From IMG/VR virus record IMGVR_UViG_3300036766_000988, positions 1-64,000 of that record: a stretch of DNA of 64,000 bases. One strand, 5' to 3'. This document shows positions 36,104 to 57,834 of this stretch, piece by piece (the stretch's first letter is position 1; every line of letters starts with the position of its first letter). The position numbers and the translations under genes were made by a program. The notes beneath the pieces are model-generated. The model made no database searches, was not told the DNA's origin, and saw only the letters and a list, made by a program, of their open reading frames with translations.

Positions 36104-36856
36104 TCAGAAGTCCTCATCAGCAAGAAGCCGCGTCCAGGCATCTCGGGGATCCTTGGGCTTCTCACAAGGTCTCCAACGCGTCGAGAAGGTCACAACATTC
36201 TCATGGAGAACTTTCTCGGTTCGCCAAACGGCCACTTGCACTCGAAGCATCGTGAGTTCTGTGATGCACGCAACGACTTGGCCCCCTTCCGCTTCAGGGT
36301 GCTGCACCCACTGACCGATCTGTAGCCAATCCGGGCGCACAAACGGGGGCACCTCGGAACCGTTCGCATCCGTGCCGGAGTCGTAGATCGGCAGCGCCCC
36401 CTCGGGAAGTTGCTCGACGAGGAACGTGCGACGACCGACCGACTGGTAGTCCATCCGCTGCCGTATAGGCGCGACCATCGCCTGAGCAAGCCGCTGACGG
36501 CCTTGCTGCGACTCTAGAGCCTGCCGGATGATCTGCTCTTGTGTGATCTGAGGAAGAACGTCACGATTGAGGTTCCCTAGATCAAGCAACCCATGGGGGT
36601 TCGTGAGCCGCTCAAACCCAAGGATAGGGCGCGTCGTGAGCGGCGTTTCAACACGACCATACTGGTCGTGGATCCTACGTAGAGCAGGTGAATCCGTCTC
36701 TAGGGACTCGTTCCGCCAATGAACAATGAGGCTCGGGACCGGCCTACGTAGGACGTCAATAGACGCAACGTCGCCAGATTCCGCGAACAGCGCCCGATGG
36801 CTGTTCATCAAGATCCGACCGTCGAGGTCGTTCGGATAGAAAAGTGTCCAGGGCAC
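36104..36856 (-). CDS. Hypothetical protein with a capsid-like segment and C-terminal AWTRLLADE tag
   Basis: GRQRLAQAMVAPIRQRMDYQSVGRRTFLVEQLPEGALPIYD segment. Confidence 0.65.
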   Translation of the reverse strand: MPWTLFYPNDLDGRILMNSHRALFAESGDVASIDVLRRPVPSLIVHWRNESLETDSPALRRIHDQYGRVETPLTTRPILGFERLTNPHGLLDLGNLNRDVLPQITQEQIIRQALESQQGRQRLAQAMVAPIRQRMDYQSVGRRTFLVEQLPEGALPIYDSGTDANGSEVPPFVRPDWLQIGQWVQHPEAEGGQVVACITELTMLRVQVAVWRTEKVLHENVVTFSTRWRPCEKPKDPRDAWTRLLADEDF

Positions 36857-36907
36857 GGGAAGGCCCGAGACTACACCATCAAAAAGAAGCTAAGAAATGT
36901 TACGCAG

Positions 36908-36981
36908 TGGAGTGTCGTACGGGGATCGAACCCGTGTACCCGGATTTAGAGTTCGGTGCCTGACCTCTAGGCTAACGACAC
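36908..36981 (-). tRNA. Amber-suppressor tRNA (anticodon CUA)
   Basis: Cloverleaf: acceptor GUGUCGU/ACGACAC, D-arm GCCU-AGAGGUC-AGGC, anticodon arm CCGAA-CUCUAAA-UCCGG (one A-C mismatch), T-arm ACGGG-UUCGAUC-CCCGU, U73-CCA. Confidence 0.9.
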
Positions 36982-36985
36982 GAGA

Positions 36986-37285
36986 TTACCGACCGATTGC
37001 CACAAGAGCTTCATCCACAGCCGTGTCGGCCAGGATAAAGCTCCGCATGGCCCGAACCCACCCAGCATTCCGAGCGAACTGAATGAACGCCGAAATTTCC
37101 TCGGGCCCCACGGTGGAACAACGCCGTTCGGCAAATTCCACCGTGAGGATGTGACCAGGGCTGGTCTCATCCTCGATGAGGACTCGAAGTCGAGGTCCGA
37201 TACTAGGCTTCAAAGCCCGAACCCTGAAGCGGTACGGAACTCCGTTGACCTTGATCTGTCGGGTGCCCCTTCGAGGCATCGTCAT
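36986..37285 (-). CDS. Hypothetical protein
   Basis: MPRRGTRQIKVNGVPYRFRV...GPEEISAFIQFARNAGW; ATGA overlap. Confidence 0.65.
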   Translation of the reverse strand: MTMPRRGTRQIKVNGVPYRFRVRALKPSIGPRLRVLIEDETSPGHILTVEFAERRCSTVGPEEISAFIQFARNAGWVRAMRSFILADTAVDEALVAIGR

Positions 37286-37680
37286 GCAGCTTCAGTACAC
37301 CGAAGAGCGAGCGGAAGACTACTGACAAGACGACGAGCTGCGGGTTCAAGAGCAAACGCCGTCAACTCGTTCCCCCGGTCGGGCTCATGGAACGGCGCCA
37401 CCGAGAAGCCCCGGTCGACTGCCCTGTTGAAGAGGCCCCAAAGAGCCTCCTCGTTGGGCACGGCAAGCATGGCGAGGTAGTTCGAGCGCGTGTACCACGC
37501 CTGATCGATTTCCGGGTGATGAGCCACGAACTCCCGCAAGGCGTGCGCCGTCTGGATGGCTTGCACCCCCGGAGGGAGATCTTCCCGCGTCACGAGGAAA
37601 AGTTTGTCGGTCGGGCCCACAACAAGACTCCGTGAACCCAGATGAGCACCCATGTTCTCCATGTCACGTCGTCCCCCCAT
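37282..37680 (-). CDS. Peptidyl-tRNA hydrolase, Pth2-like
   Basis: KLFLVTREDLPPGVQAIQTAHA...L.VPNEEAL...FHEPDRGNELTAFAL...LPLAL; start uncertain. Confidence 0.8.
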   Translation of the reverse strand: MGGRRDMENMGAHLGSRSLVVGPTDKLFLVTREDLPPGVQAIQTAHALREFVAHHPEIDQAWYTRSNYLAMLAVPNEEALWGLFNRAVDRGFSVAPFHEPDRGNELTAFALEPAARRLVSSLPLALRCTEAA

Positions 37681-38260
37681 CGGAGTCCTCGTCGTACTCG
37701 TTATCGTCTTCCGCCATAACCCTGCGTTCGTCGGCGCACTTGCGGAAGTGCATTGAAACCGCCCCGATGATGGTTTCGGGAAGACCCGCCGTCTTCAGGC
37801 TCTCCTTCCAACCCACCTCGGAACGATCCCCTGCGATCCAGTGCTTTTCCCCGATGATGAACTTGGGCGGATCACTGTAGACGTTCCCGCCAGGCGTCTC
37901 CAAGTAGGGCCACAACTCCAGCGGGCTGTCATTGCAACAACCGCAGTTATGCCGAAGATCGAAGCGGTCGACTTTCGTGTTCACGGACTTCGAATAGTAG
38001 GCCACCTTGTTCCAGCGGCCCGTAAACTGCCGAAGATCCGGGTACTCCTTGAGAAGGGACTCGATCTGGTCCGCTTGGGCAAGCGCCGCTGCGGCTTCCT
38101 TGCGAAGCTTCTCGATTGCGCGTGGAACGGCAAGTCTAGCATCCTCCTCGACCTTCTTTTGCCATTCCTCAGCGGCCTTGCGACGCGACGCTTCCGCAGC
38201 CGCTTGCTGCTCGGGGGTGGGCTCGGATGTCAGGGCCTTCAGAAGCTTCTTGCTGAGCAT
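37664..38260 (-). CDS. Hypothetical protein (HNCGCC motif)
   Basis: MLSKKLLK start coupled to the upstream stop. Confidence 0.65.
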   Translation of the reverse strand: MLSKKLLKALTSEPTPEQQAAAEASRRKAAEEWQKKVEEDARLAVPRAIEKLRKEAAAALAQADQIESLLKEYPDLRQFTGRWNKVAYYSKSVNTKVDRFDLRHNCGCCNDSPLELWPYLETPGGNVYSDPPKFIIGEKHWIAGDRSEVGWKESLKTAGLPETIIGAVSMHFRKCADERRVMAEDDNEYDEDSDGGTT

Positions 38261-39459
38261 CACGAGAGCACCTGCTTCGCATATGCGAAGGCCTCGGCCA
38301 TTGCAGCCGCCGAATGCTCGAACCACTTATCCTCGACGTGCTTGCCATCCCGATAGATGACGAGCTTGATCGGGCCGGTCTCACAGGCCCATTCGAGGTC
38401 AATGGTGCTCTTGGCCTTGTAGTGGATCCGGCGGCACCACCGCTTCTCCCGACCGGTGAAGTGCGGACACCAGTTGTCGTACGTGACCCCGAGGCCCGAA
38501 TGATCTTCGGGCGACAATGCAGGATCCTTCACCAGCTCGATGTACGCCAGGTAAAGCGGATCGGTGGCCTTGAAGTCCTCCTTCCACTGCTCGTACTTGC
38601 GATTGCCTTCCTCTCGGTCGGCCCGGACCTTCTTCTCCTGCTCGGAAACCCACTCCTCGACGAGCACGAGTTTCATACCCTCGCGGCGGAAGGTCTTGGT
38701 GGCGGCATCCACCCTCGGCTTCTGCTTACAGTGATCGGGGCAGTCGTCGTGATCGCACTCCGCCCGTTCCGTCTGGTAGCACTTGATCGTCCCATCGGGC
38801 TCGATGGTGGGGTACTTGCTGTCCTCTTCGACCCCTCCCTCAGCCTCGATCTCCGGCCAACCCTCCATGGGGTTGGAGAAGTCGAAGAAACGGAACTCGT
38901 ACGGGCAGGCCCAGTGGCAGCCACAGACCACCAACATCTGGGATCCCGCATCGAACGTGGAGTCTGCCCAGCAGAAGCCGAAACCTTCCTCCGCCTCTTC
39001 GGGCAGGAAATCCCGACGCTTGCCGGTATCCAGCTCGATGACCGTCTGCCCTTGATAGTCCTCGCCGCAGACGAGGTAATCATGACCGTTCGGATGCCCT
39101 TCGACGAACGTGTACGGGAACGCAGAGTAGTTCCTGTTCACGACCGCGATGGGCGCATCCGAGCCGAGCTTGAAGACCTTCCCCTGGATGTAAGACCAGC
39201 ATCCAGGCTTCGTCTCGTAGCTCGCGATGACAAGCTTGTACTGCCCGCTCGAACTCAGCTTCTCCCAACGATCTTTCGTGCTCTCGTTCGCGGGAACGAA
39301 AACAGCGTCCTTCTCGGCCCGATAGTACGCCTTGAGCAGACCCGGCTGAACGAGGGCCTTGAGACGCTTTCGCTCCTCGTAAGCACCCGGCTCGTGGCTA
39401 TCGAAGTCGAGGTAGGCCTGCAACTCGGGGGTCATCCCCTTGAAGGTCGTGTTCATCAC
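38260..39459 (-). CDS. Hypothetical protein (~400 aa)
   Basis: GTGA overlap with the upstream gene; GCHWACPY motif. Confidence 0.7.
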   Translation of the reverse strand: MMNTTFKGMTPELQAYLDFDSHEPGAYEERKRLKALVQPGLLKAYYRAEKDAVFVPANESTKDRWEKLSSSGQYKLVIASYETKPGCWSYIQGKVFKLGSDAPIAVVNRNYSAFPYTFVEGHPNGHDYLVCGEDYQGQTVIELDTGKRRDFLPEEAEEGFGFCWADSTFDAGSQMLVVCGCHWACPYEFRFFDFSNPMEGWPEIEAEGGVEEDSKYPTIEPDGTIKCYQTERAECDHDDCPDHCKQKPRVDAATKTFRREGMKLVLVEEWVSEQEKKVRADREEGNRKYEQWKEDFKATDPLYLAYIELVKDPALSPEDHSGLGVTYDNWCPHFTGREKRWCRRIHYKAKSTIDLEWACETGPIKLVIYRDGKHVEDKWFEHSAAAMAEAFAYAKQVLS

Positions 39460-39836
39460 GCGACCTCCGTACGGACGTAGGGCTTCTTCTCCCGCACCGG
39501 AGCCGCGATAGCCCCCTCGGGGTTGGCGAGCCACTGCTCGACCTCGGGGCTCGGCTTCGTCGCCCACGAACTCTTGGCCACCTCGGCGAAGCCAGGGATG
39601 TGCGTCCCGAGGATCGTCGTGATGTACCGTGCGTTGGGCGGGTTGTGGTTGACGACCGTGCCGTCCGGCATCACCTGCTGCCGGGTCTGGCGCTCGACGC
39701 GGCGGTACGGGAAACCCCGCACGAACGCCCACGCGAGGTTGCCCTCACGGCCTCCGGTGTTGGCACGGATGGCCCGGTGGATCGCCTTCACTTGCGCCTT
39801 CTCGTCGGCGCTCATCTGCTTGTAGTTCTCGAACAT
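39456..39836 (-). CDS. Hypothetical protein, first gene under the leader attenuator
   Basis: AAGGAG SD; LAWAFVRGFPYRRVE. Confidence 0.7.
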   Translation of the reverse strand: MFENYKQMSADEKAQVKAIHRAIRANTGGREGNLAWAFVRGFPYRRVERQTRQQVMPDGTVVNHNPPNARYITTILGTHIPGFAEVAKSSWATKPSPEVEQWLANPEGAIAAPVREKKPYVRTEVA

Positions 39837-39843
39837 GATCTAT

Positions 39844-39940
39844 CTCCTTGATTTGACTCTACTGTTTCGCGGTTGGCTGAAACAGGAGTCCAAGGAGGAC
39901 CACGTGCAAGAGCGAGGTGCAGCTAGAGGAAGTGTTTCAC
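39844..39940 (-). promoter_or_regulatory. Leader peptide MKHFL(UAG)LHLALARGPP with an SD-sequestering hairpin
   Basis: GTG AAA CAC TTC CTC TAG CTG CAC CTC GCT CTT GCA CGT GGT CCT CCT; hairpin CTCCTTG-GACTC-CTGTTTC / GAAACAG-GAGTC-CAAGGAG. Confidence 0.75.
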
Positions 39941-39947
39941 GGGGAGC

Positions 39948-39976
39948 AGCATGCGCTCTCAGATCCTGGTTGTCAA
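39948..39976 (-). promoter_or_regulatory. Sigma70 promoter
   Basis: TTGACA-N17-CATGCT; leader GTG starts 7 nt downstream (leaderless). Confidence 0.7.
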
Positions 39977-40033
39977 CGGGATCGTGACGTCAGGCTCACT
40001 TCTTCTGAAAACACCGTTGAAGTCGGAGGTGCG

Positions 40034-40360: not shown

Positions 40361-40382
40361 ACCCCACCCTGACACAAGAAGT

Positions 40383-40928
40383 TCAGCCGCTCAGGAACCG
40401 GGCGGTGACCCGAAGCGCTGTAGTATCCTCGGGACTGCACGCGATCTGCATCGGAGTTGTGCTGACGTGATGGATCTTGAACTCAACGCTCTTCGTCTTG
40501 AGAAACGTGTCGAAAGCCCCGACATGTTCAGCACGGTCTTCCCACATCTCAACCTGCTTTGTTGTCTCTGACAAGAGAGCAGCGATCGTCTTGAGCTTGA
40601 AAGGGAGCGTGTCATCCCCGTTAGAAAAATGGGTCTCATCGAACCGGAGGCCCACCTCAGCCAACAGAGCTTGGACCCGAGTCCGCAGCTTCGGAGGCCT
40701 GCCTGTAATCATGATCGCATAGACACTAGGATTGGAAATGGACTTGCGTGCCGCTGCCACCGTAGAAGCCACCCACCACTCAGCGTCAGGCTTTTCTGGC
40801 ACGCATGGAGGCGAGAGACTCTCAAGCCGACCCCACCAGCCCTGCGTCCACCACTCAGGTTTCGCAGGCGAGCGAAAAAGCGTCCCATCGAAGTCGAAGA
40901 CATGCAGGGTCTCGATAGTCACGGGCAT
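40383..40928 (-). CDS. HAD phosphatase, Swiss-Army-Knife RNA-repair type
   Basis: LHVFDFDGTLFRSP, MITGR, FK, MWEDR..H; C-terminal ALRVTARFL. Confidence 0.8.
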   Translation of the reverse strand: MPVTIETLHVFDFDGTLFRSPAKPEWWTQGWWGRLESLSPPCVPEKPDAEWWVASTVAAARKSISNPSVYAIMITGRPPKLRTRVQALLAEVGLRFDETHFSNGDDTLPFKLKTIAALLSETTKQVEMWEDRAEHVGAFDTFLKTKSVEFKIHHVSTTPMQIACSPEDTTALRVTARFLSG

Positions 40929-42181: not shown

Positions 42182-42208
42182 CGCTAACCCATCGGCACAA
42201 GAGGTTAT

Positions 42209-43586: not shown

Positions 43587-44873
43587 TCACTCGTAGTCGC
43601 GACGGCCGACATAGCTCGTCTTTTGAGGCACACCCTTGTTCGACAGGTCTTGGAAGCGGTACGTGATGACAGTACCGATCGCGGGCGGGTTGCGACGATC
43701 CTTGTCCGAAAGCCCCGTCCCGAGGTTGAACTCCACCCCAGCGTTGAGCGACACCTTGTCGTTGAAGAACCGCTGGGACTTGCATTCGAGAGCGCCCACG
43801 CGACCCTTGTGCTTACCCTTCCCCGCCGTGTACCCCGTGACGTAGGCCTCGGCATCGTAGAAGGTCTTGACCTTCACGAGGGTGTCACTTCGAGCCCGTA
43901 CGTAGAGCGAGTTCGCCTTGCGGAGCATGACGCCTTCACCACCGAGCTTCTCGACCTCATCGAGGTACATGCGAAGATGCGGGATGCCACGGCAGATCTG
44001 ATGCTCGACGAGCTTGACCTCGTTATACTTCCGCGCGACCGCCTTCAACATGTCGTACCGCTTGGAGAACGGCTCCTGCACCATCGGAAGGTCGAAGGCT
44101 CGGAACTGGATCTGCTGCCAGTAGGTTCCCTGATCATGACGGCGAACGAAACCGCTCGTCTCCTGGAAGCGCTTGCGGCCAATCCAGAACTCCCCGTCGA
44201 GGTGCAGATCCTTCGGGAAGTGCTGCAAGTACCACTCGGGCACGCGGAAGATGTTGTCGAGCCGCGAACGGAAAACCCGGCCGTCCCAGTAGGCCCGCAC
44301 CCCATCGAGCTTCTCGCTCATGAGATAGCCAGTCGGATCGAGCACCCCGTCCCACGACTCCGCAAGCAGAACCGCGAACTTCGACTCGCCTTCCTCTTCG
44401 TTCTCGGTCACGAGAACGGTCTCCACGGGAGGCGGAGGATCATCCCCGAACGGATCGGCGCCGAGCAGACGAGTCCACGCCGTAGCGGGCGCTGCTGGCT
44501 TCGGGGGTGGCACGGGCTTCGACCGCACGGTGGCCAGCTTCGACGGCACGAGATAGCGTGCAGCTCGACCGTTCTGCGTCACCTGCCCACCAAGAAGAGA
44601 CGTGGGGAGAGGAGCCCTTCGTTGGGGAGTGGGGGTCGACGGCGCATTGTAGGACGCCGCAGCCTGGACCGACGTACGAACACGGACATCCTCGGCGGCC
44701 GAGCCACGGAACGCCCGCAGGTGCTTGCATGTGCGCTGATCGATGCCCAGCGACTGATTCCGCCAAGCAGGGCACGAACAACTGTAAACCCCACCCGTGT
44801 TGTAAAGCTCGTAGCTCCGTCCCGAGCTGGAACGGACCGTACGACGCTCACCATCGCGAAGATTCTCAGGCAT
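43587..44873 (-). CDS. lig: ATP-dependent DNA ligase with an N-terminal SWIM zinc finger
   Basis: SEKLDGVRAYW, LDGEFW, EGVMLR, LVKVK, OB-fold GTGLSD; YSCSCPAW...CKHL. Confidence 0.92.
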   Translation of the reverse strand: MPENLRDGERRTVRSSSGRSYELYNTGGVYSCSCPAWRNQSLGIDQRTCKHLRAFRGSAAEDVRVRTSVQAAASYNAPSTPTPQRRAPLPTSLLGGQVTQNGRAARYLVPSKLATVRSKPVPPPKPAAPATAWTRLLGADPFGDDPPPPVETVLVTENEEEGESKFAVLLAESWDGVLDPTGYLMSEKLDGVRAYWDGRVFRSRLDNIFRVPEWYLQHFPKDLHLDGEFWIGRKRFQETSGFVRRHDQGTYWQQIQFRAFDLPMVQEPFSKRYDMLKAVARKYNEVKLVEHQICRGIPHLRMYLDEVEKLGGEGVMLRKANSLYVRARSDTLVKVKTFYDAEAYVTGYTAGKGKHKGRVGALECKSQRFFNDKVSLNAGVEFNLGTGLSDKDRRNPPAIGTVITYRFQDLSNKGVPQKTSYVGRRDYE

Positions 44874-45289: not shown

Positions 45290-45733
45290 GTGCCGCACTG
45301 GATCCTTCGAGACCACATACCCGTCGAGGTCGAAGACCCTCTCGTCTGGGCCCAGTTCTTTGAAGACATGGAAAACCGACGTGTTGCCGAAACCCTCATC
45401 GGTTCCGCACGCATCTCGACCGTCTTCTTGGGACTTGACCACAACTTTGGGGGAGAGGGCCCGCCCCTCCTCTTCGAAAGCATGATCTTTGAGGGACCCG
45501 AAGACCTCAACGAGCGAGAGGTGCGGTACGCCACGTGGGACGAGGCTACCGCAGGTCACCAAGAGCTTGTTCAGATTGTCTCGGAACGCCTGGGCATCAT
45601 CTCAAAACCGTCCAAGAGCCTCGTTGCCCGCATCGCCAAAAAGGTCGTCTTCGCGGAGAACCATCGGGTACCGAAGCCTTCTCTGACCGCCTGGGATCGT
45701 ATCACACGCGATGACGATGACGATGATCTCTAG
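45290..45733 (+). CDS. Phage hypothetical protein with C-terminal TAWDRI..DD tag
   Basis: ISTVFLGLDHNF...LLFESMIF...RYATWDEA.AGH; GTG start. Confidence 0.7.
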   Translation: MPHWILRDHIPVEVEDPLVWAQFFEDMENRRVAETLIGSARISTVFLGLDHNFGGEGPPLLFESMIFEGPEDLNEREVRYATWDEATAGHQELVQIVSERLGIISKPSKSLVARIAKKVVFAENHRVPKPSLTAWDRITRDDDDDDL

Positions 45734-46155
45734 ACGGGACGCATCCTAGCAGCGTAGTACGGCCCTCCAGGGCCAAACGGCGCTCCCGTAGTAGGCGTTC
45801 CCGTTGTAGCCGCACCCGTGACGTGCATGGTCGAGAACGGATGACGGAAAACCACCTGCCGGATGATGATGATCGGCTGAGGCGGCATCTGAGGAGCCCT
45901 CCGAAGCGTCATCTTTTCGATTTTTTCGTAGACCGTGGCAAGCGTCCTGAACCGCTCGGTCTTTTCAGGGTCGTTGCCCGTGCGGTCAGGATGTAGCTCG
46001 AAAGCGAGCTTCCGATAGCTCTTCCGAGCCCGTTCCTTCAGCTCTTCGAGGGCTTTTCCACCTAGCTCGAAGGGCATTCGTTCGATCGCTTGAAGATCCG
46101 CGGGGTAGTTCACCCCAAGCGCACAGAGCATCGAAACGACGAGGGCCTGGTCCAT
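45730..46155 (-). CDS. J-domain (DnaJ-like) protein
   Basis: YRKLAFELHPDR...ERFR. Confidence 0.85.
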   Translation of the reverse strand: MDQALVVSMLCALGVNYPADLQAIERMPFELGGKALEELKERARKSYRKLAFELHPDRTGNDPEKTERFRTLATVYEKIEKMTLRRAPQMPPQPIIIIRQVVFRHPFSTMHVTGAATTGTPTTGAPFGPGGPYYAARMRPV

Positions 46156-46454: not shown

Positions 46455-47960
46455 ATGCCCGAAGGACAACCGCTCGTCAGCGAGATCTGGGAAATGGTGG
46501 ACGGTACCGGACGATCTGTCCGAGGGATCGTTGCTGATATGACCCCGACCGTCGCCACCTTGGTCTCTTTCACGGGAAACCGCTTCCGCATCAGTCCTTC
46601 GAGGATGCTCACGACGTGGCGCTTTGCTCAAGCCCCTCCTCCGACCGCTCTGCGGTGCAATCGACGTGGATGCAACCAACCAGGGATGCTCCGTTTCCAG
46701 CGAGGACTATCCCCCGAGTGGGTCTGCCCCAGGCACCTGCCCGTGGGGGTTCAAGCTTCGCTCACGACCGAGAGCTTAGGCCTTCCTCAAACCCCTCAAG
46801 CTCAACAGGTCCAAGTCCCCCTATGCCCGAGATGTCACGTCGCGGGTCTGATGATTGAGGACGCGCGGGTATCGACCCTTCAAGTGCAGTTCTGGCAGTG
46901 CCCTCAGTGCAACGCACGTTGGGGATCGCTATCGATCCCTCCCACCTTGGTGGAAAACGTAGCCTCCTACGTTCGGGCAGCCATCGATGACTTCATGACC
47001 CAGACCCGTACGCACCAAGTGCGGATCGACCAGATCGAAACCCGCTCCTACATCCTCCCGCAGCTCTTCGGAGATACGCACCTTGCGGAAGCTGCGCCCT
47101 CAACGCCCCCTCAGCTACACCTCTACCGTGGATTGCATGTCGTACAGAACGACAACCTTGGAGAGGGGGTTGCGATGATCTTCCGCACCAGCGGCGCCCC
47201 CGTCGTACGGGACACCAGTCGGGATCATGTCATGGCCCTGCCCACCAACGAAGAGATGTTGATGGGGTCGCCTGCACGACGCACCGTCGCCGAAGCTGTT
47301 GCCGAAGCCCTTCGAGCGGATCGCGAAGAGAACCGAGCTGAACTCTTGGCTCGCCCTGTTTCCCAGAACGTGATCGACAGCTACCGATCCAGCGAGTCTG
47401 AGTACGTCGGCATTTTTCCGGTACGGCAAACCCTACCGGTTCTCCCAGCCGATCCTCAACCCTTCATACCTGTGCAGCAAATGGGGACAATAGAGGAAGA
47501 AGCTTGGATTCAGGAACAAGCCCCGACCCCTTTCGCGGCCGTGGGCCAACGATGGATCCAACGCAAAACCGGCGACCTCATCGAGATCACACGCGTTGGG
47601 CCCACGGACGACCGAAGCACCACCGTAGTACACTTCAAGCGGGTATCGGATGGAGTCGAGTCGTCAAACGCCATGTTGCTCGACGACTTCATGCGCGAAT
47701 GCCACCCCTACACAACAAGATCAAGTCAACCCCAGGACATCCCTGTTGTTGTGGTGCTCAAAGACGAAGAGTGGGAGCACGTGGATTCAGGAGAAGTCGT
47801 GCGGATTGATACGGTGGACTCCAAACGTGATCTCATCATCGTCATGCAGAAAGAGGGTAAACGTCGAAGCGTGCCCCTCTTCGAGTTTGCCAACGCTCGA
47901 TGGCGCAAGATCATCCGACGCACTGCTTACGACCGCCTCCTCGACTTGGAGGACGACTGA
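46455..47960 (+). CDS. Modular hypothetical protein (Zn ribbons, SH3-like modules, tag RTAYDRLLDLEDD)
   Basis: CPRC...CPQC; VGQRW and DEEW modules. Confidence 0.7.
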   Translation: MPEGQPLVSEIWEMVDGTGRSVRGIVADMTPTVATLVSFTGNRFRISPSRMLTTWRFAQAPPPTALRCNRRGCNQPGMLRFQRGLSPEWVCPRHLPVGVQASLTTESLGLPQTPQAQQVQVPLCPRCHVAGLMIEDARVSTLQVQFWQCPQCNARWGSLSIPPTLVENVASYVRAAIDDFMTQTRTHQVRIDQIETRSYILPQLFGDTHLAEAAPSTPPQLHLYRGLHVVQNDNLGEGVAMIFRTSGAPVVRDTSRDHVMALPTNEEMLMGSPARRTVAEAVAEALRADREENRAELLARPVSQNVIDSYRSSESEYVGIFPVRQTLPVLPADPQPFIPVQQMGTIEEEAWIQEQAPTPFAAVGQRWIQRKTGDLIEITRVGPTDDRSTTVVHFKRVSDGVESSNAMLLDDFMRECHPYTTRSSQPQDIPVVVVLKDEEWEHVDSGEVVRIDTVDSKRDLIIVMQKEGKRRSVPLFEFANARWRKIIRRTAYDRLLDLEDD

Positions 47961-49453
47961 TGCCCCCGCCTGGAATCCCTGATTGGGTCTTCCCCGGGGC
48001 TGTCGTACAACAGAACGGCCGCAGGCCCCGTTACGCCATCGGCACGATGGACCTACATAGCGATCTCCGACACTGTGAGATCTTCCTGCAACGAATCATC
48101 GAAGGAGATCCTCCGAGTCTCGCGAACGGAGAAGACTTCGAGACCATGTACCTCGGAGATCTGCTGGGCGGCTGGCATCACACGGGTGAGTATCTTTACC
48201 CTCGTATGTCCCAACCAATTAACGTCACAGGTCTGGGTGCGTTCCCAATTGGGTCTACTGTTGACATAACAAATTCCCGAGGAGAGCACGAATACTTCTC
48301 AGTCACGGGTCACGCAGAGAACACGAGCCAGATTATCCATCTCGACCAACAGATAGCCACTCAAGCCCCTCCGCTTGTAGGGGAGTGGTATCGTTGGGAA
48401 TCCGGAGACGTCCCGATCACTCTCTTTTTCGTCGAAGGAATTGCGAACGGCCAAGTTGAAGTATCCCTTGGGATGACCGACACGCTGGAACACATTCCCG
48501 TCGAGGACTTCATCCGAGCCTTAGCCAACGGACCTCGCGATGAGCCCCGTGGAGAGGCTTCCGCCCAACATCTCAACTACGAATGGGTGTTCTCCGAACC
48601 TTATCTAGATGACACGGACGAATCCGGCTTCCTTCCAGGGAGCGTTATGTTGGACACTGAGGGTCGAGAGTTCTTCCTTCTTGCCCGCAACCGCAACAAT
48701 ACATGGGTTTGCCGTGCTGCTCATGACATGAGCACATGCCCCGAGAACTACCTCGCTAGAGCGCATTTTCTCGCAAGTCAGTTCAGGGCGCAGTTCCACA
48801 TGGAAGCTGTCGAAGTGATGAGCGGAACCCCAGAAGGAATAGGGATGTCGTTCGCGGAGCGCGTTCTCCAACTGAACCAACCCATGGGCAGTGCATATCT
48901 CGCCGGGGAGCCGATCCATGAAGACGACCCCGATTACTTCAGACCCGTAAACGGAGATATCTCAGGCAATCCCGAACCCCCAATGCGTTTCCGTATCGGT
49001 GATCGATGGCATTTCGACGCCCCCAACGAAGGTATCTGGACGCTTGAAACGGTGGAGGATAGGTATCACGAGGGAGAGCACACGATCACCAATAGATTCC
49101 GAGGGGACGATGGGGCTGTCATGTCGGGCCCCCAGGACTGGGTCATCCGCAACGGTCGACGGATCACGCCACCGGATCCTAGGTTCACGGGCGATCCAGT
49201 CGAACCCAACCAAGTATGGGAGATCCCTACAAACACCACACGGCAGCCCACTTCTCGATGGAAAGTCACAAGTCTCGCTACCCGTTCCACTGGAGACGAA
49301 ATGGTGAACCTGACCCCCGAGAACGGAAAAGGAGCCCCCATCTGCTGGCCGGTGATCCGACTCCGGGCCCAAGGCCGATGTGTTTTTGACGGCCGCATCC
49401 GTCGAACATCCTTCGAGCGTCTCATCTCCGACGAGGGCGATGATGTCGGGTGA
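47960..49453 (+). CDS. Modular hypothetical protein (repeated G..W modules, tag RTSFERLISDE)
   Basis: TGATG-coupled start MPPPGIPDW. Confidence 0.7.
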   Translation: MPPPGIPDWVFPGAVVQQNGRRPRYAIGTMDLHSDLRHCEIFLQRIIEGDPPSLANGEDFETMYLGDLLGGWHHTGEYLYPRMSQPINVTGLGAFPIGSTVDITNSRGEHEYFSVTGHAENTSQIIHLDQQIATQAPPLVGEWYRWESGDVPITLFFVEGIANGQVEVSLGMTDTLEHIPVEDFIRALANGPRDEPRGEASAQHLNYEWVFSEPYLDDTDESGFLPGSVMLDTEGREFFLLARNRNNTWVCRAAHDMSTCPENYLARAHFLASQFRAQFHMEAVEVMSGTPEGIGMSFAERVLQLNQPMGSAYLAGEPIHEDDPDYFRPVNGDISGNPEPPMRFRIGDRWHFDAPNEGIWTLETVEDRYHEGEHTITNRFRGDDGAVMSGPQDWVIRNGRRITPPDPRFTGDPVEPNQVWEIPTNTTRQPTSRWKVTSLATRSTGDEMVNLTPENGKGAPICWPVIRLRAQGRCVFDGRIRRTSFERLISDEGDDVG

Positions 49454-49922
49454 ACCAGAGCGATACAGTCGCTACCCCGAGGTCGGGCTGTTCTACGCCA
49501 TGCGTGAGCCCCTGTGCCTCGCACAGATCACGGCGGTTAGCACCACGGGCCTTGGTAACGGACCGACCAGCGTCCTTCTCAATGCCTGGACGCCCACATC
49601 CGATAAAGAGGAGCTGTCCTTCATCGACCTACGGGCCGACATGGCAGACTACCTTTGGCACAGCGAGGAAATCGAACTCGGCTCAGGTCATTACGCCGGG
49701 TGGAAAATCGATGCTGTTGCGGGCGACGTGTACTTGGCCACCATGATCAACCGTCTCTGGTTCGCAGGACCCAAAACGACTTCCAAGATGCTTCACGTGA
49801 TCGCCAACTTTCATGTATCCGAAAGCGATCTCCTAATGGCAGTCCTCTACCAACAAGGTGCTGGACACCGCAGGCCTCGGTGTAAGACCGCCTTCGAGCA
49901 CATCTTGGAGGATGCCACGTGA
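49440..49922 (+). CDS. Hypothetical protein (tag KTAFEHILED)
   Basis: GAGGG SD; overlaps the upstream stop. Confidence 0.6.
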   Translation: MMSGEPERYSRYPEVGLFYAMREPLCLAQITAVSTTGLGNGPTSVLLNAWTPTSDKEELSFIDLRADMADYLWHSEEIELGSGHYAGWKIDAVAGDVYLATMINRLWFAGPKTTSKMLHVIANFHVSESDLLMAVLYQQGAGHRRPRCKTAFEHILEDAT

Positions 49923-50176
49923 GCGGAGTTCAACCAGGTCAGCTTTGGATATCCCCCGAACCCGAAACATATTATGTCTCGGCAATCGGCAATGACGGAA
50001 CAGTCTGCGTCGTTCCGGTGCGTATCTCAGGCACGGGACCACACGCGCAGATCATCCGCAAAGGCGACTCAAAAAGCGTCAAGACCTCGGAGATGCTTGA
50101 GCTGTGGATGCCTACCGCCAAGACCAGCGAACCCGGCCCGACGTGGCACGAGCGGATCATGGCCGACGAGGACTAG
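49919..50176 (+). CDS. Small SH3-like protein (tag PTWHERIMADED)
   Basis: VQPGQLWIS; GTGA overlap. Confidence 0.6.
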   Translation: MSGVQPGQLWISPEPETYYVSAIGNDGTVCVVPVRISGTGPHAQIIRKGDSKSVKTSEMLELWMPTAKTSEPGPTWHERIMADED

Positions 50177-54224: not shown

Positions 54225-54241
54225 GTAAGATCACTACACCG

Positions 54242-54397
54242 CTAGAAGCGGTCGTAGTCTCTCGTCTTGCGTAGAGGTCTGTGTTTCCGGGGGTTGGGAG
54301 ACTCCCAACGAAGTACATCCGCCAGCACAACGAATAGGAGCGCCGCAAGAACAAGGGCGATCCACAAGACATCTTCGATCGAGACGCTGTCGGCCAT
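54242..54397 (-). CDS. Small membrane protein (51 aa)
   Basis: Manual translation MADSVSIEDVLWIALVLAALLFVVLADVLRW... Confidence 0.45.
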   Translation of the reverse strand: MADSVSIEDVLWIALVLAALLFVVLADVLRWESPNPRKHRPLRKTRDYDRF

Positions 54398-54467
54398 GGA
54401 AAGCGGAAGGGACGACCCTCAAGCGGTCCCTTACAGGCGGCCAAGAGCACGTCCCCTCCAGTCCCCT

Positions 54468-54710
54468 CTACACCGAAATGTCGTCGGACAAGAGACGTTC
54501 CCAGAACGTGGGCAGTTCTCGTTCCGTCGCATTCAGTTGCGCGACAAGCGGGTGTGAATGAGGCGCGTCTTGCCGCAGAACACTCCACCGCACCCCGCAG
54601 TCAGCACAAAAGATCGTGATGGGCTGCCACGGACGCTTACCTTCGTGACACCCGAGCGTATGCCCCTTCTTCCGAACGTGGTCCCGAGCTTTCTCGATAG
54701 ACGTCTTCAT
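54468..54710 (-). CDS. Small Zn-ribbon protein (tag PTFWERLLSDD)
   Basis: CADCG; ATGA overlap. Confidence 0.6.
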   Translation of the reverse strand: MKTSIEKARDHVRKKGHTLGCHEGKRPWQPITIFCADCGVRWSVLRQDAPHSHPLVAQLNATERELPTFWERLLSDDISV

Positions 54711-54991
54711 AGGAACCCCTCATCGAGGATCTTAGCCCAGGCAGAGCCGTCACGCGGAGGAATGTGTCGAAAGGCTTTTTCGAGCACAACACGAGCTTCT
54801 TCTGAGGTCAGGAGCACCCGCAGGGCCCCTGATTGGACAAGGGTGATCCTTGAAATACGCACCTGGAACGAACACGAACGGCAAAACAGCAAGACCCCGA
54901 GCCCGCGACGTACATCCGGAGTCACCAAGATATCTCGGTGGATGGTCGTTTCCACGTGCTTCCGCATGCGGGCAATAGCCGAATTGCTCAT
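54707..54991 (-). CDS. Small protein (tag SAWAKILDE)
   Basis: CRSC; ATGA overlap. Confidence 0.55.
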   Translation of the reverse strand: MSNSAIARMRKHVETTIHRDILVTPDVRRGLGVLLFCRSCSFQVRISRITLVQSGALRVLLTSEEARVVLEKAFRHIPPRDGSAWAKILDEGFL

Positions 54992-55269
54992 CTGCGTTGT
55001 TTGCGCTTGTGAGGACGGATCTTGACCCGCCCGTCTTGTTTGCTGATCCAGGCAACTGTCTTCGCGAACTCCGCATGCCCGAGAAGAGCCTCGACCGTGT
55101 AGTACGTCGCTTTCAATTCACGGTTCGTGAAGAACGCGTGAATCGACTTGTGGCAGTCTCGGCAAAGGGTCTTGGTAACCTTTCCCCCCAGACTCTTCGG
55201 CACGAGATGATGGTCAGTCGGGTGATAATTGGGCCGCAGACAGAGCGGGCACCTATCAGGTGTCGTCAT
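54988..55269 (-). CDS. HNH endonuclease
   Basis: CPLC...DHHLVPKSLGG...LCRDCHKSIH. Confidence 0.85.
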   Translation of the reverse strand: MTTPDRCPLCLRPNYHPTDHHLVPKSLGGKVTKTLCRDCHKSIHAFFTNRELKATYYTVEALLGHAEFAKTVAWISKQDGRVKIRPHKRKQRR

Positions 55270-55570
55270 CAAGGAAGTCATCTTGGAGCCTCATCCAAGC
55301 AGTCGGTCGCTCTGTCGTGATGCCGGGTATTTTGAGCATCGCCTTGAGAAGTTGCTGTGGACCATCCTGCATCTTGTAGAAAGGCGCCAGCTCAGGTTCA
55401 GCCATGATCTCACCGTGCGTGATGCTCCACTCCTTGGCGCACTTGCGACAGCGAAAGCACCAGGTCATCGGATAGGGGTGAATCCGTACCTGGGCATCGA
55501 ACTCCCGGTGCTGGGGCGTCCGCGTGATATGCTCGAAGATCTCCCCGATTGTTTGACGAGCTTTACTCAT
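55256..55570 (-). CDS. Small protein (tag PTAWMRLQDD)
   Basis: MSKARQ start; CRKC. Confidence 0.6.
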   Translation of the reverse strand: MSKARQTIGEIFEHITRTPQHREFDAQVRIHPYPMTWCFRCRKCAKEWSITHGEIMAEPELAPFYKMQDGPQQLLKAMLKIPGITTERPTAWMRLQDDFLDDDT

Positions 55571-56222
55571 CGTCTCCAAGGAGTTCCCCAACTTTCTCCC
55601 ACGCGATGGGACGATCCCGTCCTGCCGTGAGCTTCGCAGACTCAATCTCAGCTCCCCATCCGAACCTGTCCGTGAGGTCTGGGCGCCCCCCGGCAGCGAT
55701 CTCATCCTCTGAGAAGACCCAAGAACGCCGACATCTTGTAAGATCGGCGTAACACGAGATCGTCCACGCAGTGAGGAACGTGCGTCGGTCAAGGCCCTCA
55801 GCGAGCGAGCCCCCTTGCTCAATTGTGAAGCTCCGATGCTTGTCCAACGCGACGTGATCTCGAAGGTCTTTGAGTTTGCGGGTGAATCCATTCGCAAGAC
55901 CTGCAAACGCTTCGGGATTCACGCTCTCGATGTGAACCCGCACCTCGGGTTCAAGATCGAAGAGGAAGCTCACGAAGTTCGGCTCTTGAGGTCCCCCTAG
56001 GGTGCCTTCCAAGAGGACTTGGCCCATGGCCACCGTGGAGTCGTAGAACACGTTGACACCCCACGCCATCCCGGCCGGGCCATACCCGAGGGTCATACGG
56101 TCGAAAATATCGAGCCTTGGCGCGATTGGTGCAAATTCGGCCTCAGCGACCCGGATGCTGGTGACCCGACCATCCTCCCGCTGGATGAAGTCGAAGGCGG
56201 TCGAGAGCTGCTCAGGGGTCAC
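55563..56222 (-). CDS. Hypothetical protein with capsid-like segments (tag IAWEKVGELLGDDE)
   Basis: LSTAFDFIQREDGRVTSI...AWG; YADL...WGAEI. Confidence 0.6.
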   Translation of the reverse strand: MTPEQLSTAFDFIQREDGRVTSIRVAEAEFAPIAPRLDIFDRMTLGYGPAGMAWGVNVFYDSTVAMGQVLLEGTLGGPQEPNFVSFLFDLEPEVRVHIESVNPEAFAGLANGFTRKLKDLRDHVALDKHRSFTIEQGGSLAEGLDRRTFLTAWTISCYADLTRCRRSWVFSEDEIAAGGRPDLTDRFGWGAEIESAKLTAGRDRPIAWEKVGELLGDDE

Positions 56223-56249
56223 CTAGAAAGTCTACACCGGATCGTCGAA

Positions 56250-56492
56250 CTACCTACCACGACGAAGCTTCCCTACGCTCCCGCGCCCTCCCTCGGTCGT
56301 GTGCTGTACGTCGCGCCGCACGGTCGTCCCACACTCCTCGCAGGAGCCCCGGCCATGCTTGCAGAGCTTCGGAGGATCAGGCTCCACGTACTCGAACGAA
56401 GGCGCCCCCCTCCACCAGTCCTTGGTTTCCCGAGTAGGTGGCGCTTCAAAAGGATTCTTCGTAGACTCACGGGGCCAGGGCTTCGTGCTCAT
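56250..56492 (-). CDS. Small Cys-rich protein
   Basis: MSTKPW...CKHGRGSCEECG. Confidence 0.45.
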   Translation of the reverse strand: MSTKPWPRESTKNPFEAPPTRETKDWWRGAPSFEYVEPDPPKLCKHGRGSCEECGTTVRRDVQHTTEGGRGSVGKLRRGR

Positions 56493-56742
56493 GTTCGGCG
56501 GTTCCTTCGACGGTCGAGCCAGTTGAGAAAGCGCTGCCACCTGTTGGTGGGCCACCACGTGCGAACGAGCTTACTCCCGTAGGGGCGTCCGCGCAGGACT
56601 ACTTCCTTGAGGATGCCACACCGGCACTCGTGACACGTAGTGTCGATGGGATGCTCAGCAATCTTGTCCTCGGGGGGCAGCCTACTGAAGGCCCTTCGAC
56701 AGAAGGTGAAGTCGAGGAAGACGCCTCCTGGATAGTGGAGCT

Positions 56743-57105
56743 TCAAGCAAGCTTCTCCGTGGCAGTGAGTTCCATCCACCGATGATCGCACCGATTGCAC
56801 TTGAAATGAAAGTGCTTTGGTGCATTCGGGATCTCACACACGATGAAAGTCTGACCCCACCTCCGAAGAAACCAGAAACCGTTCTTCAGGACGTAGTGGC
56901 CGCTCCCGCGACAAATTTGTCCCCAGTAAGTGATGTACTCACTACTGGCCTTACACTCGGCGCACACACGTTTCCCAAACTCGACGAACGGAAGCATCTG
57001 GGAGGATGCTTCTTCCCGCGCCCGGCAGACTTCACACGCCTGGGCCCTGTAGGGGCTCTCGCTCTTGGGTTCGGATTCGGGTTTCTCCGTCACGACGTCG
57101 GTCAT
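56743..57105 (-). CDS. Zn-finger hypothetical protein
   Basis: CEVC, CAEC, CNRC; leaderless motif upstream. Confidence 0.6.
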   Translation of the reverse strand: MTDVVTEKPESEPKSESPYRAQACEVCRAREEASSQMLPFVEFGKRVCAECKASSEYITYWGQICRGSGHYVLKNGFWFLRRWGQTFIVCEIPNAPKHFHFKCNRCDHRWMELTATEKLA

Positions 57106-57124
57106 CGCGACTACTACACCGGCT

Positions 57125-57529
57125 CTAGTGCCAGTAGAGCGCCACGGGCGTTTCGGGGTCTAACCCCGCCAGGTACGCCCAGATGGCTTTGTTCTTCCGA
57201 TACTCGGTGACCCCCTTGCGCTTCGCAAGCGCTACGAGATCCTTCGCCAGCACGCAGTAGATCTCTTCTCCGTACGGAGTCGTTTTCGTGACCCCATACC
57301 CATGCTCCTCACACACCTGCTCCCCCTCGCCCACGACATAGCCTTCGGGAAGCCGATGCGTCCCCAGAAAAGAATAGAAGTTCTCGGAAACTGGTTTTCC
57401 GGTCTTCTCCTCGATCTTCTGGATCTCCTCGAAGATCGGACTGCGGTGGCAGTTGAGGATGGTGTGGGAAAACTGAAAGGAAGGCACCGGATACGAATCA
57501 AACGGCAACAGGTAGAGGTCGAGGCCCAT
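57125..57529 (-). CDS. Hypothetical protein
   Basis: MGLDLYLLP...VALYWH; 8 nt after GGTGTAG. Confidence 0.65.
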   Translation of the reverse strand: MGLDLYLLPFDSYPVPSFQFSHTILNCHRSPIFEEIQKIEEKTGKPVSENFYSFLGTHRLPEGYVVGEGEQVCEEHGYGVTKTTPYGEEIYCVLAKDLVALAKRKGVTEYRKNKAIWAYLAGLDPETPVALYWH

Positions 57530-57537
57530 GCTGTACT

Positions 57538-57834
57538 CTACACCGAAGAGTCGTCCCCCAAGAGACGTTCCCATGCAGTAGGGGCTACCGGGTTACGAAG
57601 CTCAGGCGTCCTGGCGCGGATGTAGTCAAGGACTTGTTGTTTCGTGAGACTCGGCTCATGCACCATCTTGGTCGTGATCTCACACAGAAGGGAATCATCC
57701 TGAACGATCAGCACAGCCATGGCCCGAGCTGTGATGAAGTCCCCAGCCAACACCGTCTCGACCAAAGCCTTGACCCGTACAGCCTTGGCATCCTCAAAGG
57801 CGTCGAAAGTTTGGTTGCGTTCTTCTGAGGTCAT
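57538..57834 (-). CDS. Small protein (tag PTAWERLLGDD)
   Basis: ATGA overlap. Confidence 0.6.
   Translation of the reverse strand: MTSEERNQTFDAFEDAKAVRVKALVETVLAGDFITARAMAVLIVQDDSLLCEITTKMVHEPSLTKQQVLDYIRARTPELRNPVAPTAWERLLGDDSSV

What the first reader, a model, noticed from the sequence alone, without database searches (positions are those of the whole stretch)
36104..57834. Shared C-terminal tag (T/S-A-W-x-R-L-L-x-D-D/E) on at least 11 unrelated proteins
Seen at C-termini: DAWTRLLADEDF (36104), TAWDRITRDDDDDL (45733), RTAYDRLLDLEDD (47960), RTSFERLISDEGDDVG (49453), KTAFEHILEDAT (49922), PTWHERIMADED (50176), PTFWERLLSDDISV (54468), SAWAKILDEGFL (54707), PTAWMRLQDDFLDDDT (55256), IAWEKVGELLGDDE (55563), PTAWERLLGDDSSV (57538). 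It also occurs internally in the ligase linker (ATAWTRLLGAD). The bodies are diverse: Zn ribbons, SH3-like modules and capsid-like pieces. Inference: an amphipathic-helix plus acidic docking motif that recruits a library of variable adaptors to one hub (protease, chaperone, clamp, RNAP or a compartment-import factor), conceptually like viral F-box adaptors.
Basis: partly seen in the sequence, partly recalled or inferred. Interest (0 to 1): 0.87.

Follow-up and report, generated by a model that had tools for sequence, protein, structure and literature searches.

The report
Shared docking tail on huge-phage proteins
An uncultured 252-kb phage puts the same short tail (a one-to-two-turn Trp/Leu helix followed by acidic residues) on at least 13 otherwise unrelated proteins, and related phages keep it, which suggests a shared address tag read by one partner that is still unknown.

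Summary
All 11 listed C-termini carry the motif at the stated coordinates. The ATP-dependent DNA ligase carries it internally, and a 12th C-terminal copy lies just past the window end.

Synonymous codons differ between copies and stop codons are mixed, so the repeat is at the protein level.

- **Enrichment:** residue shuffles give 0.6 C-terminal hits against 11 observed.
- **Controls:** complete Myxococcus phage Mx1 and 1.07 Mb of related jumbo-phage DNA give 0.
- **Relatives:** two syntenic relatives that were not used for training give 8 and 7 copies in 21 and 17 kb.
- **Bodies:** they show no pairwise similarity.
- **Add-on in three families:**
  - In the ligase, 27 of 36 close homologues have the motif; the cellular ones lack it.
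  - In the Ro60-neighbour protein, 19 of 21 have it.
  - In a 12,943-cluster domain family, 10 of the top 150 have it.
- **Structure:** AlphaFold2 places it as an isolated short helix in a roughly 95-residue disordered ligase linker.

This is the signature of a short linear docking motif confined to one clade of huge phages. It is concentrated in a 30-kb island of RNA-repair and translation genes. The receptor is not identified. A conserved phage J-domain protein inside the cluster is my leading candidate, on weak evidence. I found no published description.

The parts
36107..36142 (-). C-terminal motif D-A-W-T-R-L-L-A-D-E-D-F of gene 36104..36856 (Ro60-neighbour family)
   Evidence: 19 of 21 homologues keep it. 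AF2 predicts helix 240-245 after a beta-barrel.
36104..36856 (-). Carrier 1, 250 aa: N-terminal alpha/beta domain, a copied capsid-protein N-arm segment (aa 101-163), a small beta-barrel, then the tag. It lies upstream of Ro60 in relatives.
44439..44483 (-). Internal motif T-A-W-T-R-L-L-G-A-D-P-F-G-D-D in the ligase linker (aa 131-145)
   Evidence: Kept in 27 of 36 close ligase homologues and absent from cellular Planctomycetota-type ligases. AF2 predicts an isolated helix 132-137 within disordered residues 79-175.
43587..44873 (-). ATP-dependent DNA ligase with an N-terminal SWIM/WGR-like Zn domain, a long disordered linker and a ligase core
45686..45730 (+). C-terminal motif T-A-W-D-R-I-T-R-D6-L of gene ending at 45733 (real start probably near 45330)
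   Evidence: Orthologues in L027, L028, L013, L137 and L138 keep it. The body belongs to a family of 12,943 clusters that mostly lack the tail.
45730..46155 (-). J-domain protein (HPD motif) with a conserved basic/aromatic C-terminal extension. It is convergent with the previous gene and is the best-conserved gene of the cluster. Candidate receptor, inferred only.
47922..47957 (+). C-terminal motif T-A-Y-D-R-L-L-D-L-E-D-D of gene 46455..47960 (501 aa)
   Evidence: Orthologues in L027 and L028 end in T-S-F-D-R-L-L-D-L-E-D-D.
49406..49450 (+). C-terminal motif T-S-F-E-R-L-I-S-D-E-G-D-D-V-G of gene 48047(47900)..49453
49887..49919 (+). C-terminal motif T-A-F-E-H-I-L-E-D-A-T of gene 49440(49380)..49922
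50141..50173 (+). C-terminal motif variant T-W-H-E-R-I-M-A-D-E-D of gene 49919..50176 (85 aa)
   Evidence: The same T-W-H variant occurs in L027 and L028 orthologues and in P0178 of another family.
54471..54509 (-). C-terminal motif T-F-W-E-R-L-L-S-D-D-I-S-V of gene 54468..54710 (80 aa, CxxC)
54710..54745 (-). C-terminal motif S-A-W-A-K-I-L-D-E-G-F-L of gene 54707..54991 (94 aa, CxxC)
55259..55303 (-). C-terminal motif T-A-W-M-R-L-Q-D-D-F-L-D-D-D-T of gene 55256..55570 (104 aa, CxxCxxC)
55566..55607 (-). C-terminal motif I-A-W-E-K-V-G-E-L-L-G-D-D-E of gene 55563..56222 (219 aa)
57541..57579 (-). C-terminal motif T-A-W-E-R-L-L-G-D-D-S-S-V of gene 57538..57834 (98 aa)
   Evidence: The L027 orthologue keeps T-V-W-E-R-L-L but has a less acidic end.

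Best explanation
The motif is a lineage-specific short linear docking peptide. An N-capped helix of one to two turns (T-A-W-[ED]-R-L-L) presents Trp and two Leu/Ile on one face. It is followed by an acidic stretch, often with one Phe/Leu. It hangs on a flexible Pro/Arg-rich linker, either at the C-terminus (aromatic residue 8-15 residues from the end) or, in the ligase, inside a roughly 95-residue disordered linker. I infer that one receptor surface, a hydrophobic pocket with a basic rim, reads this tag. This would gather a DNA ligase, a Ro60-associated protein and about ten small proteins of unknown function in one place or hand them to one machine, within a phage programme centred on RNA repair and translation. 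Shown: the motif, its enrichment, its conservation, its independence from the body fold, and its predicted helix-in-disorder state. Inferred: that it binds a common partner. The partner is unknown. My leading candidate is the phage J-domain protein encoded inside the cluster, which would pass tagged proteins to host Hsp70. Other candidates are the phage vWA/MIDAS proteins (Ro60 and a 558-aa vWA protein), the phage or host ribosomal stalk protein L7/L12, and a host hub such as the sliding clamp or RNA polymerase.
For: Enrichment and controls are. Bodies are unrelated. In 9 gene families the L027 orthologue (59% ligase identity) keeps the tag; identity is 64% in the motif, 55% in the preceding 20 residues and 49% in the body. 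In the Ro60-neighbour family, 19 of 21 homologues at 31-54% identity end in the tag, and two of them carry it twice. In the ligase, the tag is a conserved island in a variable Pro-rich linker in 27 clusters and is missing in cellular homologues. In the w45062 domain family the tag is present in 10 of the top 150 clusters, always after a linker. AF2 gives a ligase linker pLDDT of 34-55 with a helix exactly at A-W-T-R-L-L, and a w36104 tail helix after a confident barrel. The consensus of 65 distinct copies has W 51/65, R 51/65, L/I 61/65, and D/E at +6/+7 in 43 and 50 of 65. For the J-domain candidate: it is the best-conserved gene in the cluster (66-70% identity against 36-54% for the carriers). 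It is convergent with a tagged gene in 5 loci and lies 2.3 kb from one in distant L013. In my sample, homologues occur only in motif-positive loci.
Against: No binding partner was tested or could be modelled, because no multimer prediction was available. The J-domain association is confounded by synteny and by how the loci were sampled. The more distant motif-positive loci L019 and L022 show no J gene within 10 kb. The motif matches no solved structure or peptide, and no host protein with the tag at its C-terminus was found, so mimicry of a known host peptide is unsupported. Motif conservation exceeds body conservation only modestly in close orthologues. Only 86 of 252 kb of the genome was read.
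Confidence: 0.58

Rival explanations
1. Timing or stability signal. The tail is a degron read by a host or phage protease (Lon, ClpXP or a phage Clp-like protease), so that a set of early proteins is cleared together.
For: The tag sits on many unrelated non-structural proteins in one island. It exposes hydrophobic Trp and Leu on a flexible tail. Its relative Mx1 encodes a Clp protease-like protein.
Against: Known C-terminal degrons depend on the terminal residues, whereas here the last residues vary (F, L, V, D, E, T, G). The ligase carries the tag internally, 290 residues from the end, and conserves it there. The acidic stretch is unlike the ssrA or MuA classes (my own knowledge). No protease was seen in the 86 kb read.
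Confidence: 0.12
2. Virion-loading signal. The tail docks cargo on the inner capsid surface or scaffold, as with the T4 capsid-targeting sequence, encapsulin cargo peptides, or the shared C-terminal helix of 80alpha scaffold and SaPI1 CpmB. Tagged proteins would then be packaged and injected.
For: Carrier 1 contains a 63-residue copy of a capsid-protein N-arm. Scaffold-type C-terminal helices are a known docking device (my own knowledge). The carriers would be useful immediately on entry.
Against: There are no copies in the structural part of the window (1-36 kb). There are 0 hits in 1.07 Mb flanking the highly conserved capsid gene of 80 related phages, so scaffolds there lack the tag even though the capsid protein is 76-87% identical. 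Tagged genes sit among RNA-repair, NUDIX and J-domain genes on the early-looking strand. An internal position in a ligase fits packaging poorly.
Confidence: 0.08
3. Self-association tag. The tails bind each other, or a nucleic-acid or condensate scaffold, and build a multi-enzyme repair or translation body without a dedicated receptor.
For: Many copies exist per cell. The amphipathic and charged character suits multivalent weak contacts. Two homologues carry two copies.
Against: A helix of one to two turns is too short for a stable bundle. The strict conservation of Trp, Arg and Leu spacing points to a shaped pocket.
Confidence: 0.08
4. Trivial origin: chance, a DNA repeat or regulatory element overlapping gene ends, or hidden paralogy of a C-terminal domain.
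For: Three of the small tagged genes (54468, 54707, 55256) are tandem and may be distant paralogues.
Against: Shuffles and 1.4 Mb of control phage DNA give about 0 hits. Codons differ and copies lie on both strands. Bodies are unrelated. The tag is appended to three families whose other members lack it.
Confidence: 0.02

Closest known systems
Clamp-binding C-terminal peptides (T4 gp45 partners gp43, gp33 and gp55; bacterial beta-clamp motif QL[SD]LF; PIP box on eukaryotic and archaeal DNA ligases)
   Same: A short peptide at a terminus or in a flexible linker, shared by unrelated proteins of one phage or cell, and read by one hub. A DNA ligase is a classic carrier.
   Different: No Gln-led or F/F pattern is present. 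A conserved Trp-x-Arg-Leu-Leu plus acidic run is unlike any clamp motif I know. Most carriers here are small non-replication proteins, and no clamp gene was seen.
Acidic C-terminal tails of single-strand-binding proteins (E. coli SSB D-D-D-I-P-F; T7 gp2.5 and gp4 tails)
   Same: An acidic stretch ending in a hydrophobic or aromatic residue on a flexible tail, used for protein recruitment. Several copies here end in D-E-D-F or D-D-A-F.
   Different: In SSB one hub protein carries the tail and many clients read it. Here many clients carry it. The conserved helix part has no SSB counterpart, and the last residue is not conserved.
Chemoreceptor C-terminal pentapeptide N-W-E-T-F that tethers CheR and CheB
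   Same: A flexible linker followed by a Trp-x-x-hydrophobic peptide, with acidic neighbours, acting purely as a tether.
   Different: The pentapeptide is the extreme C-terminus of one protein family. Here the aromatic residue is 8-15 residues from the end, position +2 is Arg/Lys, and the carriers are diverse phage proteins.
T4 capsid-targeting sequence, encapsulin cargo-loading peptides, and the shared scaffold/CpmB C-terminal helix
   Same: One short tag on unrelated proteins that sorts them to one destination in a phage-type system.
   Different: The sequence is different. There is no link to capsid or scaffold genes, and the motif is absent around the conserved capsid gene of relatives.
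Phage J-domain protein Rki of RB43 (PMC3486835), and specialised J-proteins with client motifs (HscB-IscU LPPVK; auxilin-clathrin QLMLT)
   Same: A phage-encoded J-domain protein that redirects host Hsp70, and elsewhere Hsp70/J systems that recognise one short peptide on a flexible tail.
   Different: There is no evidence here that the J-protein or Hsp70 binds the tag. Rki has no known tagged client set.

Membership tests
Short linear motif / molecular recognition feature (general kind) | Short (<=15 aa) and located in a disordered or linker region | tested here: met
   The conserved core plus acidic part is 12-14 residues. The ligase linker 79-175 has pLDDT 34-55, with only the motif helical. 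Pro/Arg-rich segments precede the tag.
Short linear motif / molecular recognition feature (general kind) | Conserved relative to its flanks and found on unrelated proteins | tested here: met
   It is a conserved island in a variable ligase linker. Identity is 64% in the motif against 49% in the body. Bodies are unrelated. It is added to three families whose other members lack it.
Short linear motif / molecular recognition feature (general kind) | Binds a defined partner domain | not testable with these tools
   No multimer prediction or experiment was available.
Bacterial beta-clamp-binding motif | Q at position 1, then L-x-L-F or L-x-L-x-L | tested here: not met
   Gln is not enriched at any position in 65 copies. 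The core is W-x-R-L-L.
SSB-type C-terminal tip | Acidic run ending in I-P-F at the extreme C-terminus of an OB-fold ssDNA-binding protein | tested here: not met
   Terminal residues vary. The carriers are not SSBs. Only a subset end in D-F.
Encapsulin / capsid cargo tags | The tag sits on cargo encoded next to the shell gene and is present wherever the shell is conserved | tested here: not met
   There are 0 hits in 1.07 Mb around the conserved capsid gene and none in the structural region of the window.
Chemoreceptor pentapeptide tether | x-W-x-x-F as the last five residues of a methyl-accepting chemotaxis protein | tested here: not met
   The aromatic residue is 8-15 residues from the end. 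No chemoreceptor domains were found.
Atg8-interacting (LIR) motif | [W/F/Y]-x-x-[L/I/V] core with acidic neighbours, bound as a strand by a ubiquitin-like protein | tested here: inconclusive
   The core spacing and residue choice fit (W/F/Y/H at 0, L/I/V at +3). However, position +2 is almost always Arg/Lys, the peptide is predicted helical, and no ubiquitin-like partner was seen.
ssrA / MuA-type ClpX C-terminal degrons | Recognition of the last 3-5 residues (L-A-A or basic) | tested here: not met
   The last residues are not conserved and are mostly acidic.

The most novel reading that the evidence does not exclude
A clade of huge phages uses its own protein-sorting code. One peptide tag, read by a phage-encoded receptor (for example the cluster's J-domain protein acting with host Hsp70, or a vWA or ribosomal-stalk protein), would assemble a ligase, a Ro60 partner and a changing set of small effectors into a dedicated RNA-repair or translation-takeover machine. 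New effectors would join simply by acquiring the tail.
Probability: 0.3. Interest if true: 0.85.

Novelty: new variant of a known kind. Interest (0 to 1): 0.7.

Why it matters
Phage proteomes are mostly proteins of unknown function, with no handle for grouping them. A shared, conserved tag links at least 13 such proteins, plus a ligase and a Ro60 partner, to one physical partner. Finding that partner with a single peptide pull-down would assign a common context to all of them across a whole clade of huge phages. It would also be a clear bacterial-virus example of effectors recruited through a modular peptide, as is common in eukaryotic viruses. The tag itself could serve as a portable recruitment handle.

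Tried and rejected
- **Sequence and family searches with no result.**
  - Megablast of the region against phage records found no match.
  - Pfam and PHROGs on the carriers gave nothing except one partial capsid hit.
  - An exact T-A-W-E-R-L-L-x-D DNA pattern in IMG/VR found only this contig plus one chance internal hit.
  - A profile of 21 tails against all PDB chain sequences gave 0 hits at E<=10.
  - Literature searches for the motif, phage short linear motifs and RNA-repair papers turned up no description.
- **Host mimicry.** A scan of 185,579 species genomes for A-W-E-R-L-L-x-D-D gave 26 hits, all internal and none C-terminal. I therefore have no sign of a mimicked host peptide.
- **Capsid hub.** I rejected this as the leading idea, because the conserved capsid gene neighbourhoods of 80 relatives have no tag.
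- **J-domain relatives.** A search of IMG/VR for J-domain relatives returned only the contig itself.
- **Stop-codon read-through.** The tRNA(CUA) made me check read-through. Tags end at all three stop codons and the extensions after TAG do not look coding, so the C-termini stand.
- **Walking the contig.** One look-up failed on a truncated ORF at the window end and one on a TTG start. I reached 86 kb and found no further copies beyond 66 kb.
- **Fold searches.** Foldseek on the w36104 model gave only weak matches to small beta-barrels and NusG/Spt5.
- **Not attempted.** I did not run a library-wide profile search for the tag, because a profile of about 14 columns cannot reach significance against 1.8 billion proteins.

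Full report
**Source and setting**

The window is the first 64 kb of a 252,183-bp IMG/VR contig, IMGVR_UViG_3300036766_000988, and window coordinates equal contig coordinates. GC content is about 59%.

The closest annotated phage is Myxococcus phage Mx1, with 41% identity in the Ro60 protein. Closer relatives exist only as metagenomic contigs. These include two 'huge phage' assemblies in GenBank, GCA_902730345.1 and GCA_902730495.1.

Positions 1-25 kb look structural, with large tail or baseplate-type ORFs. Positions 25-66 kb form an auxiliary island with:
- Ro60/TROVE, an RlaP nucleotidyltransferase and PTH2
- an RNA-repair HAD domain, a PARP-like protein and an ATP-dependent DNA ligase
- a J-domain protein, NUDIX, a cyclic-phosphate receiver domain and an exoribonuclease
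- just past the window end, a vWA protein, ribosomal protein L7/L12 and EF-Tu

The ligase core is most similar to Planctomycetota ligases among named cellular proteins. This is a weak hint about the host.

**The observation**

Stops are TGA, TAG and TAA. Codons for the same residues differ from copy to copy, and copies lie on both strands. The repeat is therefore selected at the protein level and is not a DNA element.

In 72 predicted proteins, a loose definition finds 11 C-terminal copies. Shuffled proteins give 0.60 +/- 0.77, with a maximum of 4 in 2000 shuffles.

A position matrix built from the window copies was applied to sequence it had never seen:

| Sequence | Size | C-terminal copies |
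|---|---|---|
| Syntenic relative L027 | 21 kb | 8 |
| Syntenic relative L028 | 17 kb | 7 |
| More distant relatives L019, L022, L013 | | 1 each |
| Complete Mx1 genome | 170 kb | 0 |
| Ten other Ro60-type jumbo-phage loci | | 0 |
| DNA around a conserved capsid gene of 80 jumbo phages | 1.07 Mb, 8046 ORFs | 0 |

In the contig itself I found one more C-terminal copy at 65275-65682(-), next to the phage L7/L12 gene. There are none in 1-36 kb or in 66-86 kb. The tag is therefore concentrated in a 30-kb island. There it marks 12 C-termini and one internal site.

**Anatomy of the tag**

From 65 distinct copies the consensus is P-P-P-[RP]-T-A-W-[ED]-R-L-L-[DG]-D-D-[DP]-[FD]-D-D:

| Position | Residues | Count of 65 |
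|---|---|---|
| 0 | Trp (otherwise Phe, His or Tyr) | 51 |
| +2 | Arg (otherwise Lys or His) | 51 |
| +3 | Leu or Ile | 61 |
| +6 | Asp or Glu | 43 |
| +7 | Asp or Glu | 50 |

In the 50 C-terminal copies the aromatic residue lies 8-15 residues from the end.

Thr at -2 with Glu/Asp at +1 reads as a helix N-cap. Trp, Leu(+3) and Leu(+4) would fall on one face of the helix. This is inference from the sequence.

AlphaFold2 with alignments agrees. In the ligase, residues 79-175 are disordered (pLDDT 34-55) except for a helix at 132-137, which is exactly A-W-T-R-L-L. In the Ro60-neighbour protein, a confident beta-barrel is followed by a helix at 240-245.

**The carriers are unrelated, and the tag is an add-on**

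- With tails removed, the bodies show no BLASTP similarity and have no Pfam family.
- **Ligase.** 27 of 36 close homologues carry the motif as a conserved island, [TN]-A-W-x-[RKA]-L-x-x-x-D-P-F-x-D-D, in an otherwise variable Pro-rich linker. Cellular WGR-ligases have a short linker without it.
- **Ro60 neighbour.** 19 of 21 homologues at 31-54% identity end in the tag, and two of them carry it twice.
- **w45062 family.** The body of the gene ending at 45733 belongs to a family of 12,943 clusters. 10 of the best 150 carry the tag after a linker. The others stop right after the domain.
- **Orthologue comparison.** In nine orthologue pairs between the window and L027, identity is 64% in the motif, 55% in the preceding 20 residues and 49% in the body.

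- Residues 101-163 of the Ro60 neighbour are 56% identical to the N-terminus of a 295-aa HK97-type capsid protein that is 76-87% conserved across many jumbo phages.
- Its C-terminal domain is a small SH3/KOW-like barrel.
- 'Zn ribbons' rest only on CxxC pairs.

**What it most likely does**

The properties above are those of a short linear docking motif: short, in disorder, conserved against its flanks, acquired repeatedly by unrelated proteins, and working equally at a terminus or in a linker. I put it at about 0.6.

The binding step itself is inferred, and the partner is unknown. I could not run multimer predictions.

**Candidate receptors**

1. **The J-domain protein at 45730..46155.**
   - It is the best-conserved gene of the cluster (66-70% identity).
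   - It is convergent with a tagged gene in five loci from different samples.
   - It is 2.3 kb from the only tagged gene of the distant locus L013.
   - Its homologues appear only in motif-positive loci in my sample.
   - It has a conserved basic/aromatic C-terminal extension that would complement an acidic/hydrophobic peptide.
   - A phage J-protein that redirects DnaK is known (Rki of RB43, PMC3486835).
   - The association is confounded by synteny and by sampling, and L019 and L022 show no J gene nearby.
2. **The two vWA/MIDAS proteins.** vWA sites typically bind an acidic side chain. The Ro60 neighbour and the ligase are the two carriers kept in the most distant relatives.
3. **The stalk protein L7/L12.** The phage copy keeps the basic/hydrophobic factor-binding surface and sits next to a tagged gene.
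4. **A host hub.** No host protein with the tag at its end turned up and no solved structure contains a similar peptide. Mimicry of a known host peptide is therefore unsupported.

**Rivals**

- **Common degron.** This fits the 'many early proteins' pattern. It fits poorly with variable last residues and with a conserved internal copy in the ligase.
- **Capsid-loading signal.** This is suggested by the capsid-derived segment. It is weakened by the absence of the tag from structural regions and from 1.07 Mb around conserved capsid genes.
- **Self-association.** This is possible, but a helix of one to two turns with a strict Trp/Arg/Leu pattern looks made for a pocket.
- **Chance, a DNA repeat or hidden paralogy.** These are excluded by the controls.

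**Comparison with known systems, and novelty**

The logic resembles clamp-binding peptides, SSB-type acidic tails, the chemoreceptor N-W-E-T-F tether and phage cargo tags. The sequence meets the defining features of none of them (see the membership table).

I found no description in the searchable literature. I rate it a new variant of a known kind. The principle is familiar. New here are the motif, its clade-wide use in huge phages, and the number and diversity of carriers.

The next useful steps are a full-proteome scan of the contig and relatives, a peptide-against-proteome multimer screen, and a peptide pull-down with a Trp-to-Ala control in laboratory E. coli expressing the island.

Noticed in passing
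window 36908-36981 (-): A tRNA with anticodon CUA (amber suppressor type; Rfam tRNA 56.8 bits) lies between the Ro60-neighbour gene and PTH2. TAG is still a common stop (29 predicted genes). Since bacterial Ro60 genes are usually accompanied by tRNA-like Y RNAs, this could be a Y-RNA-like module rather than a decoding tRNA.
   Followed up: partly
window 33759-36080 (-): The 159-aa ORF 35601..36080 ends in TAG and is in frame with the Ro60 ORF 13 codons downstream. In relative L027 the two genes are not in frame, so this is probably coincidence, but amber read-through would fuse them.
   Followed up: partly
window 10172-18756 (-): Four tandem large ORFs (838, 756, 599 and 670 aa) with Gly/Thr-rich composition share a different C-terminal ending, P-[VI]-V-x-G-P-[WA]-D-G-x-[ST]-x-P-x-N. 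They are likely paralogous tail-fibre-type proteins with a common C-terminal module.
   Followed up: no
contig 65825-66211 (-) and about 75135-76304 (-) (L024:1624-2010; L026:521-1690): The phage encodes its own ribosomal protein L7/L12, with a Cys-rich hinge instead of the usual Ala-rich one, and a full-length EF-Tu. A tagged 135-aa gene lies next to L7/L12.
   Followed up: partly
window 36370-36558 (-) (aa 101-163 of gene 36104..36856): This segment is 56% identical to residues 8-70 of a 295-aa HK97-type capsid protein that is 76-87% conserved in many jumbo phages. A second short match (aa 81-91) is to that protein's C-terminal end. It looks like a captured capsid N-arm inside a non-structural protein, possibly a decoy or a capsid-binding piece.
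   Followed up: partly
window 43587-44873 (-), N-terminal 75 aa: The ligase N-domain has an invariant C-x-C...C-x-H pattern (SWIM-type zinc finger) in the region where cellular homologues are annotated as WGR. The metagenome gene call starts 97 codons too late and cuts this domain off.
   Followed up: partly
L027:11311-11667 (+): In the relative, the small gene after the ligase ends in D-D-G-I-P-F, very like the SSB C-terminal tip. No equivalent ending was seen in the window.
   Followed up: no
window 38260-39732 (-): A 490-aa protein without any family match is 55% identical to a gene in the distant locus L013, more than Ro60 (42%). There it sits beside the tagged gene and near the J-domain gene. 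Its function is unknown and it is another possible partner of the tag.
   Followed up: no
window 40919-42181 (-), 58364-58732 (-) (L024:9103-9471): A PARP-like catalytic domain (weak match) and a cyclic-phosphate-processing receiver domain add to the RNA-repair / NAD-conflict flavour of the island.
   Followed up: no
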